A stretch of DNA of 64,000 bases from Vitrella brassicaformis CCMP3155 (taxonomy: Eukaryota; Protista; Chromerida), in NCBI GenBank assembly GCA_001179505.1, contig CDMY01000451.1, positions 10,155 to 74,154 on the forward strand, in the 5' to 3' direction. Within the stretch, counting starts at the first letter, position 1. The number at the start of each line of letters is the position of its first letter. The translations under genes and the position numbers were made by a program. Under the pieces are notes generated by a model that was not told where the DNA came from, made no database searches, and saw only the letters and a program-made list of their open reading frames with translations. Positions 1 to 9,550 of the stretch are shown here, piece after piece.

Positions 1-2097
1 CTCCTCGGGACCCGTACAGTTGTAGAAGAACATCGGCATCTCCTTGCTGCATGCACACAGACAGACAGACAGACAGACAGAAGATTCGTGATGCTCCCTT
101 GTCGGTCCGAGTGTTCTGTGTGGTGTGTAGTTGTGAGAGGTACTTTGGCCATGGGAAGTCGAGGCCGTCGTAGCTACGTTCCTTGATCGTGACGCCGTCC
201 TGCAGTGAGCCCTCGTAGAAGGACTGCGAAGGGAACTCACTCAAGCACGGATGCATCCGGTACTGGACCTGACACATGACCAATCCACGACACAAAGAAC
301 GTTTTGCCATCCATTCTTTCTTCTCTTGCTCTGTTTGTGACCAACGATCAAATGTTGTGTATGTGTGTGTGACCAGCATACTTCGAGTCTGACGGGCTTC
401 TTGAGGGCAATGAGTCGCTACAAATAGGGACTGGGACAAGCCCGCCTTGGCTGCCTCTTTGCACATCACTACAGGTCCAAGCTGACACTGATCACCGACG
501 AGCATCAGCTTCTTGGCGCCCATGACGATCGGCACCAGGCACTCCGGCTCCATCGCCTGCGTCGCCTCGTCTATCAAAACCTGATTGGTAGGGCCATCGA
601 TGGATGAATGTTTGCATGACTTAAGCCAACGCACTGACCTGCTCGAATCTGAAGCCATCGAGCCGCTGGTCGGCTGCCCCGATGCATGTGCAGCAGATGA
701 CGTCGGCGGCGGTAAGCAGTTCCTTCTCGAGTGGTTCCCGCAGCCTCCTGAGCCTCCACTCATCCGCATCCTCCAACTCGCCTTTCTCCTTCTGTCGTTC
801 CATGAAGAGGTACATACTTAACGAGAAATGACGCAATTGGATTCGTGTGTGCTCTGTGCCTGCGTACCTTCAGTCCCTCTAGATCGGCTATCTCCGCCTG
901 CACGGGGCCCCAACCGTCCTTGGTGACACATTTGATCTGTCTGTGTAGGGCCAGATGCTCCACACTCGACTGCGCGTCCTCGCGGCGGCGAGCGTACAAA
1001 CGAATCACCTGCAAAAGTGGGCGGGGGGATATGTGCACAGATTGCTCGCTGCATCGTCATCTCTCTGTGTGTACAGACGAGGCTCCTCTGTGTATCACCT
1101 TGAGGCCTGTGCGATGCAGCCGCTCCGCCAGGTTGTCCACAGCGACGTTAGATTGTGCGCACACCAACACCTGACCCCGATGCAAAGATGGATGCACACA
1201 GCAACGAAAGCTGTGCCATGGGCTGCTACGTACCTGTCCCTGTTTGCACAGATGGTAGACGATCGTGGCCGATGTGAGGGTCTTGCCAGTGCCCGGCGGC
1301 CCCTGGATGAGGCACAGCGACGACTGCAGCGCCGTCTTGATTGCTAAGGTCTGCGAATCTTTCAACTCGGCCAAAGCGGAGACAGACAAGTCACGCCGCA
1401 GCGTCGGCCTGACACATATGCACATCACATGGCATCAAATGTGAACGAAAGCCGTATGTTGACGTACTCAATAGTTGGTTCCTTGACTTCGTCATAGCCG
1501 ATCAAATGGCCCCGCAGTTCACGAAGAAGAGACTTGCTCACCGCGGTCTCGTCACGGGCGAGCAGATTCAAGGCAGACTTCATTCTGAGTGTGTAGGCGG
1601 CATGTGTGTGTGTCTGTTGCGTGTGGGTCTGTGGGCCGCCCACCTGTTGATATTCACAGCTTTCGGCCCGAACTCCACGCTGTAGGGCCGTGTGATGTTG
1701 CGGTCCCACGGACCCTGATCGACAAAAATGTGGCCATCCCATCCCATCCAGCGCTGTGCTACGCCTTGTCCATGCACGTACGCTTTGCTTAATGGGACAG
1801 CGCAGCTCAAGGACTACTTCGTCATGTGGCGTCATCCACTGAGGTGTGATCATCTTGACGTGGCCCTCCTGCATCCACTCATTACCACCTGACACAACGC
1901 CAATCAGCGCACACCAATACGTCACGCGTAGTCAGGGAGTGGCATGATGCCTACCGGTGTAGGCGTATTTGATGGCGAGTTCATCGCCCACGGCAGGACG
2001 CACATTGCTCTCGTCACGGGGATAGAGGAAGATGGCCGTAGGACGACGATTCGACGCAACTTCCCAACGGACAGTGATGTTGGTCTGCACATCCAAT

Positions 2098-2142
<45 letters not shown>

Positions 2143-2270
2143 TGCCAGCGTGAGCTGGCATGTTGCCACCCACCCACCCACCTGTCTTTGCGACTCTTTG
2201 CGACTCCTCATATCCTCGGCCTCGGCATCGATCAGTGAGGTGTAAGTGTCGTAGTACTCGCCGACATCCA
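1..2270 (-). CDS. UPF1: UPF1/RENT1-type SF1 RNA helicase core (multi-exon; runs off the left end of the window)
   Basis: Spliced minus-strand exons give [84 protein letters not shown] (Walker A), [49 protein letters not shown] (Walker B), [26 protein letters not shown] and EMPMFFY. These are in UPF1 order. It is probably a paralog rather than the canonical UPF1, because no CH domain precedes it. Confidence 0.92.
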
Positions 2271-2340
2271 CATACCTACACAACGACACACACCATGATC
2301 AGCGTCATATACTCGTTTCTGTGTGTGTATGCGGCAGACT

Positions 2341-5300
2341 GACCTTTTTAAGACAGACATCGGCTTGGCGCTGACGGATGAGACGGATGAAGTGGGAGCC
2401 TCGGCGTGGGCCTCAAGTGGTGGATCAAACAAAAGTACGGGATAAAAGCGAAGTCTTGATTTGTCCTTTACATGTGCTCTAGCTGACCTGTGTCTGCTGG
2501 TCGTACGATATGATGGCAGGCTCACCACCAGACAGACCGTACGACGAATAATCCTGATGATGGACTCATACAGACGGATAAAATGAGGCTGGAAATGGAC
2601 CTGCTGCTTCTCTCGGACCTGACCTCTTGTATTTCACTGAGGGCATCATCAGCTGTGACGCTGACGACAGTCTCACCACACGAACGCGACACAAGCTGCA
2701 CAGGCAGAAACAAAGGCTGCCCGCCTACATGCATTCTCTTCTACCGACCGAATAGGGTGGAGCCTCTCGATGACTGCGCTTGTCGCTCCTCTGGATCTTC
2801 GCCGGCGGTCTCACGCCAGTCAGCCTGCTCTCAGACGCTGTCATCTGCTCGGATAGAAACATTAAACCCATGCCTGTTGCCAATAGAGTGAGTGTCGGCA
2901 TGGCTCACGCTCATGGTATTGCGTCCCTCAGAGGGCGGCCACTGGTGCTCCGACTGCTGGTCGGCAGCAGCAGCTGACTCGCTTTCCGCTCCACGTCTCG
3001 GTGCCTGCAATGAATCAGCTCACTTCCAGGTCTCTGCCTGCTTGGGCGTGTGGGTGCTGTCTGTACCGTGTCGCTGCTTTGTTCAAGTGGGCCGATGAAG
3101 CCATCCGCTATGCGTAAATATGCAGATTGAGTCTCCTCGTCGGACGCTTGACTTGGTGCTTGTAACATCTCCTGATGAGGGAGTGGTCTTGGCGGTTTAT
3201 GGGCGTTGGCAGGCTGCATTCGAGGATGAATGGGGAAAGGTAGAGGCTGCGGGACGGACTCGGCCACAGCCGAACTCTCATTTTGCTTCTATCACACACT
3301 CACACAACAAGCGATATGCGTGCATGGGCCACGGCCGATGAATCCATATGTCATTCGCACCGCTGCCGACTCGTCCATCGCAAGGCCCTGAAGTGCAACA
3401 CAGACGCGCTCAGGGATTGTAAAAGGAAGTCACACATTTGCTGGCGTCCTACCTGCGGATCGCCGTGCCTGTCGCCGCTGGTTGGTGGTGCGGGAGCAGA
3501 CGCGGCGGTCTGCGAGAAGCGATGCACGTCGCTGAAAGCACAAGGGGCTCTGTGTTGCGTACCTGTCTGCTGAGGTCACTTTGGGATAGCTGGTCCGCTG
3601 CTGATGGTGTTGGTGGTGGTGCATCTGTCGTCGGCCGGACCTGTTCTGTGCGTGTCGGCATCGCCTCGGTCAAGCAATTGTCCACATGACCTGATGACGC
3701 ACATATGACAACGGACAGCCCCTTTCCCCTCGCCGTCTACACTGTCTGGTTGCATACTTTGAAAGCAGAGTAGGCGCAGTTGATCTCTGATGCGCGTAGC
3801 ACGGAAACGGACCTGAATGAGTACACAGGGATCCCCAGACACGCTCATCGAAACTTCGATTCAGGTCTACTTACGAAATCGCTTTCTGACGCATCGATAC
3901 TCAAGAGATTGAGTTGCCTCAGCAGCGACTCAATGTCCTGATGATTGGCCAGACACTAACCAACTCATGTACAGACACGTGCACCTTTGTGTCGCACCTG
4001 AGCGTGCATGAGTTGGTAAGCGATGGCCTCCTCACCGACCGACTGTTGGCTGGCTTCATGCAGGTACTCTTTGAGCTCGTCCAGCGCCTGCATCACACAT
4101 ACATCCTATGTGCGTGGCAACGGGGGTTCCTTTCCTACCTCTGGCAGGTGGGCGGCATCACTGGGATTTTGCGTCCCATCCCCTCCTCCACCAAACGCCA
4201 AGTCCTCCTCCACTTCCGGACGGTTGGACCGGGTAAGTGGGACGGGCTCGTCGCCCTTGCAGACGTGTGACTCGCCATCTTTGGCAGCCCTCTCCTCGCT
4301 TTTAAAAATAGAAGAAGCAACGAGGGCACCACTACCAGCTGCTGGTGCTGCCGGCTCGCACATGAGGGGATACGGCAGAGGGTGTGGATGACTCGGGTGT
4401 ATTGGAGCCGGATGCAGCCGAAGCTGTGCATGTGCAGCCGCGGCGGATGGCGTCAGTGACGGGAAAGTGCTCTGCAGAGAAACATATGACGGGCGAAGGG
4501 CAATTTATCGAGCTCTCTCTGTGCCTGCCACCTGTGCATGTGAGTGTGCATCCCCCTTGTGTGGTGCAGGTTGATCAGTAACACTCTGCAACAAAAGGAA
4601 AACAACCGACATGAAGGAATGACCGTGGGTGTGGCGGAATGACCAGGTGCTGTGTCGGTGTGAGTGTATACCTGGCGTAGCCGTTGACTGATGCGCGCAG
4701 CAAAGAGGCGGTCCTGCGTGAAGTAAAGAGAAGCAAGCGTACAGACGCTGATGACCCCTCCCACGCACTTACCGTGTTGCTCTGTGACTCATCAGCACAC
4801 AAACCCTCAAGTCGCCAGACCAGCAGGCCAATGTCCTGATGATCACCAAGACATGCCCTCTCCTCATGCGTGTGCTGAGCCCACCTGAGGCGACTGCATC
4901 TGCAGCTGGTCGATGAGAGCATTCTCACGGGCTGGGTCATCGACGGCTGCACGCATCGCCTGCAGAAGCTCGTCAAAGGTCTGCATTACAGGGAGGTTAA
5001 TGACATTCTGGAAGTCATGTGAGAGGCAGAGGTACCTCTGGCGGTCGCAAACCATCACTCCCCTCCGTCGGCTACACAACACACATCCATACAGAGACAG
5101 AGTCACACCGGTCCGTTTCCCTTCCCTTACCGCCACTCCGTCGATGTCGTCAGGGGCAGGCAGGGCGCCGGCGACAGCAGCGCATGGCAAAGGAGGATGC
5201 TGACCAAGCAAAACACATTTATCGATGAAAAAGAATATGTCCAGACCTCGGTGCCTTTCCTGCTGTGCTCCCACCTGTTGACATCGTTCCCTGAACCCCG

Positions 5301-5898
5301 AGATCCAGTCGTCGCTCGCCCCGAATTTACTGATCTTCAACCGAGCGGCGATTTCCAGCGCCTTGGCCTTGATGTCCTTCGCGCGCACACTCGCAGGATC
5401 ACCCTGGGTTGCTACCCACTGACGCATCTCGTCCTCGATCTGCGGATGCTTCGGGCCTTTGGTGCGCTTCTTGCTCAGGTCGGCATCATGCTCGCCCGAC
5501 TCCCTCTGCTTTTTCACCTTAGAGCACCATTTCTTCAGTTGGTCGAGGGTCACGCCCTTCTCTTGTGCGAACTGAGGCATCGAGATCTTCTCCCCGCTCT
5601 GCTTGCGTCGATTGAATTCCTCCACCACCTGCAGCCGCTCTCCAAGGTACACCTCCCCCGCCCTCCCAGTCGTCACCTGGACAAACACAAGAGTGCGATG
5701 ATTCGACGAAGTGTGCGTACGTCTGTCGGTTCATACCATATGTGAGGACGGCGCTGTCGTTGCTGTTGTAGGCAGCAATGGCGGGAGAGACTGAAGGCGA
5801 TTGCGTGACGACCCCGGCGTGATGACCATCCCATGACCGATGTGTGGCATGGCACGAGGAAGTGGGGAGGGCTGCCAAGGGTGTGGTGCGGGAGGATA
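2341..5898 (-). CDS. CENP-B/pogo(Tc5)-type HTH DNA-binding protein exons plus a duplicated helical module; probably the N-terminal part of the UPF1-like gene
   Basis: Exon 5676-5275 encodes ERLQVVEEF...KRTKGPKHPQIEDEMRQWV...KDIKAKALEIAARLKISKFGASDDWISGFRER, which fits the CENP-B tandem-HTH consensus. Phase-compatible GT-AG exons run from 5898 down to about 2900. The joins from 2900 to 2340 are ambiguous but feasible. The start lies in the gap at 5927-6226. Confidence 0.75.
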
Positions 5899-5926
5899 CT
5901 GACAGACACATATACACATAGCGGAA

Positions 5927-6226
5927 NNNNNNNNNNNNNNNNNNNNNNNNNNNNNNNNNNNNNNNNNNNNNNNNNNNNNNNNNNNNNNNNNNNNNNNNNN
6001 NNNNNNNNNNNNNNNNNNNNNNNNNNNNNNNNNNNNNNNNNNNNNNNNNNNNNNNNNNNNNNNNNNNNNNNNNNNNNNNNNNNNNNNNNNNNNNNNNNNN
6101 NNNNNNNNNNNNNNNNNNNNNNNNNNNNNNNNNNNNNNNNNNNNNNNNNNNNNNNNNNNNNNNNNNNNNNNNNNNNNNNNNNNNNNNNNNNNNNNNNNNN
6201 NNNNNNNNNNNNNNNNNNNNNNNNNN
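5927..6226. other. Assembly gap (300 N, placeholder size)
   Basis: Run of N. All four gaps are exactly 300 nt, so the true size is unknown. This gap must hide the 5' ends of two divergent genes. Confidence 1.
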
Positions 6227-7516
6227 GCGCCGAGCGCCTCATCGGCAAGCCAGGCTACCGGGTGGCCCTCCTGCCGGCGGCCATCGACGAGAAGGGGCGG
6301 CAGCGGCAGTTCCGCCACCTCTATCGCCTGCAGGTCTTTCGCAAGCCGGCGATGGACATGGCCGAGCAGGCGACTGACTACGACATCCAGTGCTGCGTGC
6401 GCGTGTACCATGGACAGCAGCCGGTGTGTGCGGTGCCGTACGTGCCCGTCGAGAAGAGCAGACAGGCCGACAAGCTGTGTGCCACATGTCTGGTGCCGTG
6501 TGCTGGCGGTGGCGGCATCTGCGGCAAACAGAACACCTTCCGCAATATGGTCAACTCTCACCTGCGCAAAACACACAAACTGACAGAGGCCGACCTGCTG
6601 CAGGTCAGTGGACAGACAGACTCACATGGACGGAAACGCTCTCATTTCGCTGTGTGTGTGTGTAGGGTTTTGCTACCGTTCGCGGCCCATCGGTGCCGGA
6701 GACGCCCACCAACACACGTACACAACGAAGCCGCTCTCTCTATCGCTTATCATTCCACGGTGTCTCTCTGCTGTTGGTGTGCAGCTTGCCAGACCTTTTC
6801 GTTTGCCGGCATGGTGATCGACAAGACGCAGGCCGACACCTATGGCAGCCACATGTCGGCTGGGTCATCGACCACCGACACACAGACAATGCCGTGAGCA
6901 CACACAACACCAGAAGCACCACAGATGCAGTCATCCCATTCCTCTGTGTGTGGTGCTACTGTCTTTGAGTGCAGGCCATCCCTCGTCGACGTGCTGCCGA
7001 TCGGCGGCAAAGAGATGCCGCAGCCGCATTTGTCCGACATGATGCCTCTCGGCAGCTATGGGGCTGCAGCTGGAGTGACCGGCAATGTCAACCAGATGGA
7101 ATTGTAAGCAGCACTGAATCAGCAGCGATGAGGACAGATGGGCAGATGTGTATGGTGGCATGTGCATGCAGGCCATTTTTGGACTACTACCAGCCGAACA
7201 GCAGCGACTCCTGGATGGCATCCAACAGCGACAATGAGGAGGACGGTAAACGGCACTGACGACACGAGGACAGAAAGGCGGCTCAAGTGAAGCGTCAGGT
7301 TCGATGATGTGCTCGTTAGGTTTTGGTGGCAGCGGGCTTGCTGCTCCGCCCCCGACGCTTAATGGCGGCTGCAAGCCCCTCGGTCGCGCAGATGAAGAGA
7401 TCGACATTGTGATGCAGCAGGTAAGCAAGACACACGAAACGACCTGTGAGGGAGTTCAGCCGTCTGTGTGTGTTCTCGTTCAGTCGCTCGATGAGTGGCT
7501 GAATGTGCTCGGCTAG
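6227..7516 (+). CDS. Hypothetical protein with a Cys/His zinc-finger-like motif (5' end in the gap)
   Basis: The first visible exon, 6227-6603, ends LCATCLVPCAGGGGICGKQNTFRNMVNSHLRKTH. Six further phase-compatible GT-AG exons end SLDEWLNVLG* at 7516. Confidence 0.7.
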
Positions 7517-8086
7517 TCGTACCCAGTGAGTCGACACGTTGGAGACGGTTTTTTCTGTACGGGGATGGTGTATCGCGGTGTGCTCGAGTGCCTTGACCGA
7601 GTGCCGTGACGTTTTTACACCGATGACGCCTGTGTGTGAGCGTGTGTGGACGAGGGAACACTCATGGGGCGCATGTAAGAGTTTTCGGGGGAGTTTATAT
7701 CAGTCTATCTGGGAGGGGGGGACGGATGAGAGAGTGATCGGAACAGTCCATGTCTGCAGTTGGCTCCGTATGCGAGACAACCACTGCATGAGGGCATGTG
7801 TGTGTGTGTGTGTGTGTGTGTCCACACTGGGGGACGCTACATATCGTAGGCAGAACTCGCATCTGACAAGAGATCGAATGTACGCGTGTGGCCATGTCGA
7901 CTCCACCCATCAAGCAGTCACACATGCTGGCTTCATTTGCAGACTGACAGATACACATGCAATGCGTGTGTGAAATCGTGCACACACAAGCAGTATGCAG
8001 GAACGTTGACACACAGCTGCTACAGACACACATGCACCTTGCTCATGGATCCGTCCCCTCATTCATTCATTCATTGGATCGGTCTA

Positions 8087-9550
8087 TCACAGCTCGTCGG
8101 GCACATCCGACAGCACGTCAAGGAAATCCTGACACAGATCAAGCATTCCGTACGCCACACAAACAGGTGTGTGTGTGTGTGTGTGTGTTTCTAGGCTGAC
8201 CCACCTGCATGGTTTGTGTGATCTTCTGTTGGCTGGCGAGGAACACCTCCTTGTCGCCAGCTGTCGCAGGCTTGTCCATCGACTCTATCGCTGCACCACC
8301 ACACAACCAGATACATCGGCGAACATCTCTGTCTCTCTGTGTATGTGTGTGTATCGTGATGCACTCGCGCACTTTTCTCGAAGTTCTTGATGAGCTGTTT
8401 GCTCTGCTTGTCCTTCTCGGGGTCCAGACCCTGGACACACACCGGACGCACGTGCAGGCAAGCAGGCGTGACCCATACCCCCGTCTGTGTCAGTGTGCCC
8501 CTGCTTGCCTTGGATATGAAGCGCATGTCGTCGCTCTCTTTGTACATGGCCCGCAGAAAATTCCTAAGGCACATACCAATCGTCAACTCACTCATCCCAT
8601 GAATGAGTGCATGTGTGTTCACCCACCTGAGCCCCTTCCACTCGTCCGCTGTGATGTCGTCAGTCCTCGCACGCAGAGCAGAGCCCATCTCCTCCCACCT
8701 GATTTGATTGACCCACACGGAAGGACAAGAGTGGGTGTCAGCATACCATGGTACATACAGGCGTGTCTGTCTGCCTGCCTGCCTGCCTGCCTGTACCTAC
8801 CTGAGTTTGGCTTTGATAAATCTGTCCCTTTGCAGTGCGCCAGCCGGAAGCGTGTCCCCGCTGTACACATCCGCATACGCACTCACAGGCTGCACCTATC
8901 CGTACCACACACCACACACAAAGCCAGACAAAAAGATGGCCAGTCATGTGTGCGATTGCGCGTGTAACTCGTGTGTGTGTGTTCTTACCTGCCGCAGAAA
9001 TGCCGCAGTGATCCCGTCGACAGGTGCGTTGGTGGTGGGAAAAGAAAGAGGGATGGGGGCGACAAACAACAGGACCGGCAGAACAAGGGAAAACAGGGGG
9101 GAGAGCGACGGCCTCGCTCGGTGACTGCACAAAGACAGAGGGCGACAGCCAACACACAGAGAGAGGGCAGCTATCCATCCATCCCTTTATTCATTTATCT
9201 TACGAGCGATCTGGTGGCTCAGCACCGAGCACAGTCCTCACAGAGTGTCTTGTGTGAGTGCTTGGGAAGGGCAGGGAAGGAACGAACGCTGGTACTGCTG
9301 CTGATGAATGCCGCCTGCATCAGGGGAAAGGAAAGCAGGACAAGATTCGCATTCATGTGAGCTGCCTGCTGGCGGCTATGGGCAGCTACCTGAGCGTCGT
9401 TGGTGCTGCGCCTGTGCATTCTGCAAGGACCATTGCACCTGCATCCAAGCAGCGATAAGGGATACACACAAACAGACGTGATCTGGGCAGCTGAGCATAG
9501 ATCTGCTCCTCCCTACCTCCCAGGGCAAACGTGGACAGCGATTTCACCAT
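8087..9550 (-). CDS. Nucleus-encoded thylakoid-lumen protein, PsbQ-like helical bundle
   Basis: The spliced product has a signal peptide (MVKSLSTFALGGAMVLAECTGA), an AFVP motif, a hydrophobic thylakoid-transfer stretch (PLFSLVLPVLLFVAP) and an AxA site (VSAYA). The mature part reads DVYSGDTLPAGALQRDRFIKAKLRWEEMG...WKGLRNFLRAMYKESDDMRFISKGLDPEKDKQSKQLIKNFEKTIESMDKPA...DFLDVLSDVPDEL*. The gene model and targeting are well supported. The PsbQ-like call is recalled similarity only. Confidence 0.65.

What the first reader, a model, noticed from the sequence alone, without database searches (positions are those of the whole stretch)
1..5898. Apparent fusion of a CENP-B/pogo DNA-binding domain to a UPF1-type helicase
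Seen: one minus-strand chain of GT-AG exons. From 5898 down to about 2900 every join keeps the frame open, and almost all are phase 0. The chain passes through a CENP-B/Tc5-type tandem HTH (5676-5275), two copies of a helical module and low-complexity linkers. It then reaches PMSVLKR|YVDVGEYY, the start of a UPF1 core with intact Walker A and B motifs. There is no intergenic space and no AAGCTCGCA spacer motif between the parts. Established: CENP-B-type HTHs derive from pogo/Tc5 transposases and bind DNA sequence-specifically, and UPF1 is an RNA-decay helicase. Inference: a domesticated transposase DNA-binding domain could tether an RNA helicase to specific loci, for co-transcriptional RNA surveillance, R-loop removal or transposon silencing. 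The splice path from 2900 to 2340 is ambiguous, so two tandem genes cannot be excluded.
Basis: partly seen in the sequence, partly recalled or inferred. Interest (0 to 1): 0.85.

Follow-up and report, generated by a model that had tools for sequence, protein, structure and literature searches.

The report
CENP-B-like cassette spliced onto broken UPF1
In the alga Vitrella brassicaformis, a DNA-binding module derived from a transposase is spliced in frame onto the core of the RNA-decay helicase UPF1, but a one-base insertion breaks the helicase reading frame, so the fusion is real as RNA and doubtful as an enzyme.

Summary
The minus strand of 1-5898 carries one chain of 33 GT-AG exons. It includes a CENP-B/Tc5-type double HTH at 5676-5275 (Pfam E 1.7e-7; best fold match CENP-B 1HLV, TM 0.65). 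It also includes two copies of a three-exon helical module and a UPF1 core with Walker A and B.

Spliced RNA contigs settle the ambiguous stretch. My exon model gives the 1607-nt length of one contig exactly and reproduces 13 depth bins to within 0.2. That contig joins ...AKPMSVLKR|YVDVGEYY in frame, so two tandem genes are excluded.

- The HTH belongs to a cassette of about 700 aa. At least 20 Vitrella paralogs share its HTH, and several also share its conserved central motifs. They carry other effectors: TLDc, alpha-kinase, SH3, RING, AP2, OHA.
- UPF1 begins at the same phase-0 intron where the nearest paralog begins TLDc, which points to exon shuffling.
- A paralogous locus keeps the same neighbour gene, the cassette, a TLDc-like stretch and a UPF1 C-terminal remnant.
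- New: one extra T near 420, present in DNA and RNA contigs, shifts the frame between motif III and motif IV. The ORF stops at 237-239, before RecA2.
- New: a second 5' end that reads like canonical UPF1 feeds the same helicase exons at 2260. Its DNA is not in the window.

The scan noted this stretch before (s1-252816) and a related chimera (s1-212181).

The parts
5927..6226 (.). Assembly gap (run of N) that hides the 5' exons and promoter of the gene.
   Evidence: Sequence. RNA contigs run on upstream of 5870/5901 for 96-167 nt of sequence that is absent from the window. Comparison with the paralogous locus L001 suggests about 1.5 kb is missing.
5737..5898 (-). First visible exon. It is homologous to the region upstream of the HTH in the paralogs.
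   Evidence: RNA joint 5674->5735. tblastn of the paralogs reaches 5886-5925.
5275..5676 (-). Exon encoding a bipartite CENP-B/Tc5-type HTH DNA-binding domain (134 aa).
   Evidence: Pfam HTH_Tnp_Tc5, E 1.7e-7. Fold match to 1HLV, TM 0.65. 24 Vitrella paralogs at 40-59% identity.
4672..4980 (-). Helical module copy 1, three exons: 4980-4885, 4835-4773, 4713-4672.
   Evidence: RNA joints. Similarity to copy 2 about 9 sd above shuffles.
3758..4087 (-). Helical module copy 2, three exons: 4087-3998, 3937-3875, 3812-3758.
   Evidence: Exon sums and depth bins of X5 contig 11. Alignment.
2624..3288 (-). Conserved central motifs of the cassette (ADGFIGP; SRLTxxRPPAKIQRSDKRSHRE; TADDxLSEIQE), on exons 3288-3067, 3004-2909, 2844-2749 and 2695-2624.
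   Evidence: tblastn and alignments to paralogs P0010, P0002, P0011, P0021 and P0022. Intron 2908-2845 shown spliced by X6 contig arithmetic.
2488..2553 (-). Last cassette exon (DYSSYGLSGGEPAIISYDQQTQ). It ends in phase 0.
   Evidence: It aligns to P0010 ...DMRQQTE, whose exon ends at the same place in L001 (QQTE|GT).
2412..2487 (-). Swap intron, with an unusual GAG acceptor. The cassette lies upstream of it and UPF1-derived sequence downstream.
   Evidence: Required by the length of contig 11 and by bin 2377-2574 (15.1 predicted, 15 observed; alternatives give 9.9 or 26.5).
2344..2411 (-). UPF1 linker exon (...AKPMSVLKR, compare UPF1 ...HVLLRY). No CH domain precedes it.
   Evidence: No CH-domain motif anywhere in the window.
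2182..2275 (-). First helicase-region exon ([31 protein letters not shown]). A second 5' RNA path joins at 2260.
   Evidence: X5 contig 11 ends at 2231 and a depth-70 contig starts at 2260, a k-1 overlap. An X6 contig carries 255 nt of other sequence upstream of 2260, reading ..PVLLRYKDVY.
1955..2084 (-). Exon for UPF1 domain 1B.
   Evidence: Its only PDB matches are UPF1 chains, E 6e-5.
1234..1408 (-). Exon with Walker A (GPPGTGKT).
   Evidence: Pfam AAA_11, E 1.1e-18. Model.
382..580 (-). Exon with Walker B/motif II (IDEATQ) and motif III (GDQCQLGP). It carries the 1-nt insertion at about 418-421 (TTTGTAGCGA where TTTGAGCGA is expected).
   Evidence: 84% identical to human UPF1 up to ..SQSL. 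[12 protein letters not shown] follows in the next frame. The exon is 199 nt. It is contiguous with 0 gaps in X4 DNA and in X5 and X6 RNA contigs.
144..268 (-). Exon with motif IV (VQYRMHP...). It is out of frame with the upstream ORF, and the premature TGA lies at 237-239.
   Evidence: Matches UPF1/NAM7 residues that start 15 residues after the previous match ends. Model.
1..46 (-). Next helicase exon (KEMPMFFY...). The gene runs off the start of the window.
   Evidence: Sequence. Loose end at 144.
6229..6900 (+). Divergent neighbour gene, a paralog of the DUF8274 gene that sits beside the cassette gene in L001.
   Evidence: tblastx, 77% aa identity over 124 aa. Gene table of L001.

Best explanation
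This is one transcription unit of Vitrella brassicaformis. An N-terminal cassette specific to this lineage has replaced the N-terminus and CH domain of a UPF1 helicase. The cassette holds a CENP-B/pogo-type double HTH, two helical modules and conserved basic motifs.

Shown:
- The exons are spliced in frame from the HTH into the UPF1 stalk, domain 1B and RecA1.
- The switch from cassette to UPF1 lies in a phase-0 intron (2487-2412). The nearest paralog switches from cassette to TLDc at the same intron.

Inferred:
- The gene arose by exon shuffling within a family whose cassette acts as a portable targeting head for varied effector domains.
- A CH-less UPF1 would not depend on UPF2 and would not be auto-inhibited. 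This rests on established knowledge of the CH domain.
- An intact protein would therefore be a helicase placed by the cassette, probably on DNA or chromatin.

As sequenced, a 1-nt insertion between motifs III and IV ends the ORF at 237-239, after about 1,195 visible codons and before RecA2. The predicted product is the cassette plus a RecA1 stub with no helicase activity. The locus is most likely a recently disabled or decaying member of the family.
For: Domains:
- HTH by Pfam and by fold.
- The UPF1 identity of the core. Motifs II-III are 84% identical to human UPF1 at E 2.9e-23, against 1e-7 for other SF1B helicases. Domain 1B matches UPF1 only.

Splicing:
- 15 RNA joints, all GT..CAG.
- The exon model sums to exactly 1607 nt, the length of X5 contig 11.
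- The model reproduces 13 consecutive depth bins within 0.2. The two alternative paths fail.
- The ORF is open across all 21 joins.

Family:
- 24 paralogs at 40-59% identity, all those checked from Vitrella.
- Their partner domains are TLDc, Alpha_kinase, SH3, RING, OHA/DUF7602 and AP2. None has a DDE domain.
- Cassette motifs are shared beyond the HTH.
- The last cassette exon ends at the same place in L001.
- L001 keeps the same divergent neighbour gene, the cassette, a TLDc-like stretch, the last 99 positions of AAA_12 and a CCCH finger.

Frameshift:
-. It is present with 0 gaps in the DNA and RNA contigs.
Against: - The N-terminus is unknown because it lies in the gap.
- No protein in the public collections carries this HTH exon at more than 59% identity, so no annotation or assembled ORF confirms the fusion.
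- A contig shows that the sequence is continuous. It does not show a single full-length molecule through the whole helicase.
- A second 5' path with a canonical UPF1-like sequence enters the same exons at 2260. It may be the major form: depth 70 after the join against 29.6 before it.
- Contigs drop minor variants, so a copy without the extra T could be hidden.
- DNA binding by the cassette is untested.
Confidence: 0.6

Rival explanations
1. Two separate tandem genes: a cassette gene that ends near 2850-2350, and a UPF1 gene with its own start site.
For: At the paralogous locus L001 the public annotation calls the cassette and the helicase remnant as two genes. The acceptors at 2412 (GAG) and 2276 (TAG) are atypical, since 15 of 15 confirmed acceptors are CAG.
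Against: The spliced form has no in-frame stop between 5898 and 2275. The TGA near 2850 is intronic. X5 contig 11 physically joins 2553-2488, 2411-2344 and 2275-2231, and both its length and the depth bins fit only that path.
Confidence: 0.04
2. The fusion protein is full length and active. The +1 shift is bypassed by programmed frameshifting, is specific to the sequenced cultures, or affects only one of two near-identical copies.
For: Everything downstream of the shift remains open and highly UPF1-like ([27 protein letters not shown]; KEMPMFFY). Contigs keep only the majority variant (tool note).
Against: The T is present with 0 gaps in the contigs of one DNA-like and two RNA runs from two studies. 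The site (UUU GUA G CGA) has no 0-frame stop and does not resemble known +1 frameshift sites (my own knowledge). Public protein fragments gave no Vitrella sequence that reads through.
Confidence: 0.15
3. The helicase exons belong mainly to the canonical UPF1 gene, whose N-terminal and CH exons lie outside the window. The cassette-UPF1 transcript is then a by-product. It could come from a rearranged, duplicated and gene-converted copy, or from an assembly that collapses two loci.
For: An X6 contig carries 255 nt reading ..PVLLRYKDVY|EYYDTY, close to human ..HVLLRYEDAYQY (quoted from my own memory of the UPF1 sequence, not fetched here), joined to the window at 2260. X5 has a fork at the same base, and depth rises from 29.6 to 70 there. 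Upstream of 2260 the two sequences are only about 57% identical, yet homologous across the window's splice junction. That pattern suggests paralogs with a conversion tract.
Against: X4 DNA contig 2148-2757 crosses 2260 without a fork. DNA depth over the helicase (86-106) is not double that over the cassette (78-130). The adjacency of cassette and UPF1 is shared with the old paralogous locus L001, at about 70% nt identity. The other 5' end is not in the 64-kb window.
Confidence: 0.2

Closest known systems
CENP-B and other domesticated pogo/Tc5 transposase DNA-binding domains (CENP-B, Jerky/TIGD, POGZ, POGK, fission-yeast Abp1/Cbh)
   Same: A bipartite HTH with a Pfam HTH_Tnp_Tc5 hit and a whole-domain fold match to CENP-B(1-129) bound to DNA. 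The domain sits in a spliced host gene.
   Different: No DDE_1 or dimerisation domain in this gene or in any paralog checked. Here the HTH heads a cassette specific to Vitrella, with helical modules and basic motifs, and that cassette is joined to many unrelated effector domains. DNA binding and any target sequence are untested.
UPF1 (regulator of nonsense transcripts 1), an SF1B RNA helicase
   Same: Stalk, domain 1B, Walker A, motif II and motif III are present. Motifs II-III are 84% identical to human UPF1. Domain 1B matches UPF1 alone among solved structures.
   Different: No CH (UPF2-binding, auto-inhibitory) domain. About 770 residues of cassette stand in its place. The reading frame is broken before RecA2.
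UPF1-like helicases with other accessory domains (MOV10, HELZ/HELZ2, ZNFX1, IGHMBP2, senataxin)
   Same: The principle of an SF1B core carrying different N- or C-terminal targeting domains.
   Different: As far as I know (from memory, not tested here), none carries a transposase-derived HTH. In addition, this core is UPF1 proper rather than one of those families (E 1e-7 or weaker to them).
Vitrella 'HTH CENPB-type domain-containing proteins' (for example CEM36121.1 = P0010, CEL98338.1 = P0005)
   Same: The same cassette (HTH 40-59% identical; shared ADGFIGP, SRLT..RPPAKI.RSD.RSHRE and TADD..S.I.E motifs), the same boundary for the last cassette exon, and the same neighbour gene at L001.
   Different: Those proteins continue into TLDc, alpha-kinase, SH3/RING, AP2 or OHA domains. 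This one continues into UPF1.

Membership tests
CENP-B/pogo-type DNA-binding domain (HTH_Tnp_Tc5) | Profile match above the curated threshold | tested here: met
   PF03221, E 1.7e-7, 31.6 bits against a cut-off of 22.2.
CENP-B/pogo-type DNA-binding domain (HTH_Tnp_Tc5) | Two three-helix HTH subdomains arranged as in CENP-B(1-129) | tested here: met
   The AF2 model has six helices in two groups. 1HLV_A is the top hit at TM 0.65/0.67 over 136 columns, and the next hit has TM 0.29. The first HTH alone gives only a weak Pfam hit (HTH_28, E 0.077).
CENP-B/pogo-type DNA-binding domain (HTH_Tnp_Tc5) | Sequence-specific DNA binding | not testable with these tools
   Needs EMSA, DAP-seq or ChIP.
Active pogo/Tc5 transposase | DDE_1 catalytic domain downstream of the HTH | tested here: not met
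   No DDE hit in the window ORFs or in 26 paralogs scanned. The ORF downstream is helical modules and then UPF1.
UPF1 (SF1B) | Motifs I, II and III of RecA1 | tested here: met
   [14 protein letters not shown] and GDQCQLGP. AAA_11, E 1.1e-18. 84% identity to human UPF1 residues 342-393 of 2XZO.
UPF1 (SF1B) | UPF1-specific domain 1B after the stalk helix | tested here: met
   Exon 2084-1956 matches only UPF1 chains (E 6e-5, residues 37-75 of 2XZO). The stalk exon alone gave no PDB hit.
UPF1 (SF1B) | N-terminal CH zinc-knuckle domain (binds UPF2) | tested here: not met
   Only about 45 residues lie between the last cassette motif and ..VLKRY. No CH-type cysteine motif in any frame of the 64-kb window.
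UPF1 (SF1B) | RecA2 (motifs IV-VI) in frame with RecA1 | tested here: not met
   Exon 580-382 is 199 nt. SQSLF and [12 protein letters not shown] lie in different frames. TGA at 237-239. Motifs V-VI lie beyond the start of the window.
Vitrella CENP-B-like cassette family | Shared cassette motifs beyond the HTH | tested here: met
   Alignment score 309 to P0010 over ADGFIGP...QQTQ, and 202-215 to P0002 and P0022. tblastn.
Vitrella CENP-B-like cassette family | Effector domain begins after the same phase-0 exon boundary | tested here: met
   Window ...QQTQ|GT at 2488. L001 ...QQTE|GT at 5481.
Vitrella CENP-B-like cassette family | Conserved genomic context | tested here: met
   Head-to-head DUF8274-like neighbour at both loci, 77% aa identity.

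The most novel reading that the evidence does not exclude
Vitrella uses a domesticated CENP-B-like DNA-binding cassette as a portable addressing module. The cassette is exon-shuffled onto at least seven kinds of effector domain. The UPF1 member is a working, CH-less, UPF2-independent RNA helicase held on chromatin for co-transcriptional RNA surveillance. Its one-base frame break is decoded by +1 frameshifting or is absent from a second, hidden copy. The canonical-looking 5' end that joins the same exons at 2260 comes from a split or trans-joined UPF1 gene.
Probability: 0.1. Interest if true: 0.85.

Novelty: new variant of a known kind. Interest (0 to 1): 0.6.

Why it matters
Domesticated transposase DNA-binding domains and UPF1-like helicases with accessory domains are both known. 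A CENP-B-type HTH spliced onto UPF1 proper, in place of the CH domain, did not turn up elsewhere. The representative search with the HTH exon found it only in Vitrella-type paralogs, none with a helicase. Full-text searches for Vitrella with UPF1 or TLDc found nothing relevant.

The wider point is the family. One cassette sits on TLDc, alpha-kinase, RING/SH3, AP2, OHA and UPF1 domains, with the swap at a conserved phase-0 intron. This is a clear case of exon shuffling in a relative of the apicomplexan parasites. It also gives a testable idea: the cassette may direct different activities to common genomic sites.

Two further results bear on how, or whether, this organism runs nonsense-mediated decay. 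The most UPF1-like helicase seen here has a broken frame, and its exons carry two different 5' ends.

Tried and rejected
- Exhaustive enumeration of splice chains timed out or gave thousands of solutions. It worked only after I restricted acceptors to CAG/TAG and added the length of the RNA contig.
- The window's own annotated protein was not found. The search of 50% representatives gave nothing above 59% identity to the HTH exon. A search for long proteins using the HTH of P0008 found only P0008 and P0002.
- The search for RNA-derived ORFs that carry the second 5' end found nothing (best E 0.85).
- The search for a Vitrella fragment that reads through the frameshift found only UPF1 fragments at most 89% identical, none matching the window.
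- The second 5' end and the exon upstream of 5898 are not in the window, and the window holds no CH-domain motifs.
- Exact-pattern scans of JGI metagenome contigs for the alternative junction and for the shared exon found nothing.
- Three rescues of the frame were considered and rejected. A small intron from about 471 to 418 would delete 18 residues of motif III, a stretch 84% identical to human UPF1. A donor at 421 would delete [12 protein letters not shown]. Retention of intron 381-269 keeps the frame open but inserts 52 unrelated residues. The RNA contigs are contiguous over 380-578 and splice out 381-269.
- Placing the canonical 5' exons in the N gap is unlikely. By synteny with L001 the gap should hold about 1.5 kb of cassette 5' exons and a shared promoter.
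- The UniRef name 'PARP catalytic domain' for a cluster-mate of P0003 was not confirmed by Pfam.

Full report
**Organism and region.** Paralogs of the HTH exon are annotated proteins of Vitrella brassicaformis CCMP3155. The finding lies on the minus strand of 1-5898. A run of N at 5927-6226 cuts off the 5' end of the gene, and the gene runs off the window at base 1 inside the helicase.

**Domains.**
- Exon 5676-5275 (134 aa) hits Pfam HTH_Tnp_Tc5 above its curated threshold (E 1.7e-7).
- An AlphaFold model built on 30 family sequences (pLDDT 74) has two three-helix groups. Its one clear structural match is the CENP-B(1-129)-DNA complex 1HLV, aligned over the whole domain (TM 0.65/0.67, prob 1.00). 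The next hit has TM 0.29.
- The helicase exons hit AAA_11.
- Motifs II-III are 84% identical to human UPF1 (E 2.9e-23). The best non-UPF1 SF1B helicases reach only about 1e-7.
- The domain 1B exon matches UPF1 chains only.
- This is therefore UPF1 proper, or a very recent copy of it. It is not a distant UPF1-like helicase.

**Transcript structure.**
- Of the runs that hold this DNA, X5 and X6 are spliced RNA contig sets. X4 follows the genome through the introns and so behaves as DNA.
- Fifteen joints were listed. After the stated shifts all are GT..CAG introns of 49-113 nt.
- Sixteen more joints were not shown, so I rebuilt them from contig arithmetic.
- X5 contig 11 is 1607 nt long. Two of its pieces were given: 4471..4138 at record 190-523, and 3288..3066 at record 943-1165.
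- With the fifteen listed introns fixed, one natural chain fills 4138-3289 with exactly 420 exonic nt and an open frame. Its introns are 3997-3938, 3874-3813, 3757-3691, 3562-3510, 3452-3388 and 3360-3289.
- Downstream, the exons are 3004-2909, 2844-2749, 2695-2624, 2553-2488, 2411-2344 and 2275-2231. With these the total comes to exactly 1607 nt.
- The model predicts the mean depth of X5 in 13 consecutive 198-nt bins from 2179 to 4752 to within 0.2. Examples are 15.1 against 15, 20.0 against 20, 12.0 against 12 and 39.6 against 39.6.
- Two alternatives fail in bin 2377-2574, where 15 was observed. A 27-nt exon at 2370-2344 predicts 9.9. Retention of the intron after 2488 predicts 26.5.
- X6 contig 16 independently shows that intron 2908-2845 is removed, because 95+96+36 = 227 record letters.
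- The contig therefore joins ...DYSSYGLSGGEPAIISYDQQTQ | AHAEAPTSSVSSVSAKPMSVLK(R) | [11 protein letters not shown]... in frame.
- The two-tandem-genes reading is excluded at the level of RNA continuity.

**The HTH is the head of a family cassette.**
- A search of 1.8 billion representatives with the HTH exon found 24 proteins at 40-59% identity. Their lengths are 165-2010 aa.
- All ten looked up are Vitrella proteins or cluster with Vitrella proteins.
- Pfam shows HTH_Tnp_Tc5 together with TLDc (the commonest partner), Alpha_kinase, SH3, RING, OHA/DUF7602 or AP2. None has a DDE domain and none has a helicase.
- Similarity to the window extends well beyond the HTH. It covers an ADGFIGP motif, SRLTxxRPPAKIQRSDxRSHRE, TADDxLSxIxE and a linker exon.

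**Where the swap lies.**
- The nearest cassette paralog is P0010 (CEM36121.1). It aligns with the window through ...SEIQEDYSSYGLSGGEPAIISYDQQTQ and then diverges.
- In its locus L001 that exon ends QQTE|GT and the next exon starts a TLDc-like domain. In the window the exon ends QQTQ|GT at 2488 and the next exon is UPF1 linker.
- The effector domain thus changes at one phase-0 intron. That is the pattern expected from exon shuffling.

**A paralogous locus, L001 (CDMY01000878.1).**
- L001 has the same head-to-head neighbour, a DUF8274 gene 77% identical at protein level to window 6229-6600.
- It then carries the cassette, a TLDc-like stretch, and a UPF1 C-terminal remnant in open frame with it. 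The remnant covers AAA_12 positions 97-195 and includes motifs V-VI (...[24 protein letters not shown]...ALTRARYGL...).
- A CCCH finger follows.
- The cassettes of the two loci are about 70% identical in DNA.
- The adjacency of cassette and UPF1 therefore predates an old duplication. It is not a recent accident of this locus.
- L001 may be the chimera noted earlier as s1-212181, but I could not confirm this.

**The frameshift.**
- Exon 580-382 is 199 nt long.
- Up to ...[10 protein letters not shown] it reads UPF1 in the frame inherited from the HTH. The next conserved residues, [12 protein letters not shown] (UPF1: ERLVVLGIRPIRLQ), are in the following frame, directly after a TAG.
- The splice to VQYRMHP at 268 is in phase with that second frame.
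- In 2XZO numbering the first match ends at residue 393 and the next starts at 409.
- The DNA reads TTTGTAGCGA where TTTGAGCGA would give ..F E R... This is a single inserted base at about 420.
- The exon is contiguous, with no gaps or mismatches, in X4 (DNA) and in X5 and X6 (RNA).
- The ORF from 5898 therefore ends at a TGA at 237-239, after 1,195 visible codons and before RecA2.
- The downstream exons are still intact and conserved. The break is therefore recent, or bypassed, or confined to one of two copies that the contigs cannot separate.

**A second 5' end (unexplained).**
- An X6 contig lies on the window only from 2260 downward. It continues upstream for 255 nt of other sequence whose last 30 nt read ..PVLLRYKDVY, then EYYDTY. 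This is the canonical UPF1 sequence that follows the CH domain.
- In X5, contig 11 ends at 2231 and a contig of depth 70 starts at 2260. This is a 30-nt overlap, as expected for neighbouring unitigs at k = 31. It marks a fork with a second inflow.
- The alternative sequence is homologous to the window's spliced mRNA across the 2344|2275 junction, at 17 of 30 nt, and is identical to it from 2260 on.
- It is not in the 64-kb window, and no CH-domain motif is in the window.
- However, X4 DNA contig 2148-2757 crosses 2260 without a fork, and DNA depth over the helicase is not doubled.
- I could not reconcile these observations. The options are a gene-converted paralog that the DNA contigs hide, alternative or trans-joined 5' exons, or differences between cultures.
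- The reads tool was exhausted, and the searches of public proteins and metagenome contigs found nothing.

**Assessment.**
- The functional reading, a DNA-tethered RNA helicase, is reasonable for an intact protein. Loss of the CH domain removes UPF2 dependence and auto-inhibition, on established knowledge.
- That reading is weakened here by the broken frame.
- It is also reframed by the family context. The DNA-binding head is a general-purpose cassette, and UPF1 is one of many partners.

Noticed in passing
window 9594, 22231, 28869, 44336, 47567, 50951, 50960, 57230: The 9-mer AAGCTCGCA occurs 8 times against 0.44 expected by chance, on both strands and once as an adjacent inverted pair (50951/50960).
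   Followed up: partly
L001 (CDMY01000878.1:115425-124081), 3001-8312: A paralogous locus. It holds a DUF8274 gene (divergent), the cassette gene P0010, then one open frame that runs from a TLDc-like stretch into the last 99 positions of AAA_12 (UPF1 motifs V-VI), followed by a CCCH finger. The public annotation splits it into genes of 481 aa and 407 aa.
   Followed up: partly
window 2227 and 5648: At 2227 the X5 RNA contig has C (changing D to E in ..SLIDAEAE..), while X4 DNA and X6 RNA have A. At 5648 both X4 and X5 have C where the assembly has T.
   Followed up: no
window 5425-5644 and 4917: X6 holds a contig 95% identical to the first half of the HTH exon that then diverges (..EMRKWMAGLD). 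This is a close expressed paralog. X6 also has a contig that joins the window at 4917 after 59 nt of unrelated sequence.
   Followed up: no
window 3289-3360: The intron after ..GLAMDESAA still encodes VRMTYGFIGR, which is exonic in paralog P0021 (..DESAAVRMADGFIGR). Part of an ancestral exon appears to have become intron here.
   Followed up: no
window 2090-2147: A (CT)n(GT)n microsatellite fills much of intron 2181-2085 and breaks the contigs of the DNA run.
   Followed up: no
window 6229-6600 (+) and P0014 residues 1253-1377: The neighbour gene's large exon is also 54% identical to the C-terminal part of P0014. P0014 is a 1750-aa Vitrella protein that carries the same HTH cassette plus DUF7602 and OHA domains.
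   Followed up: no
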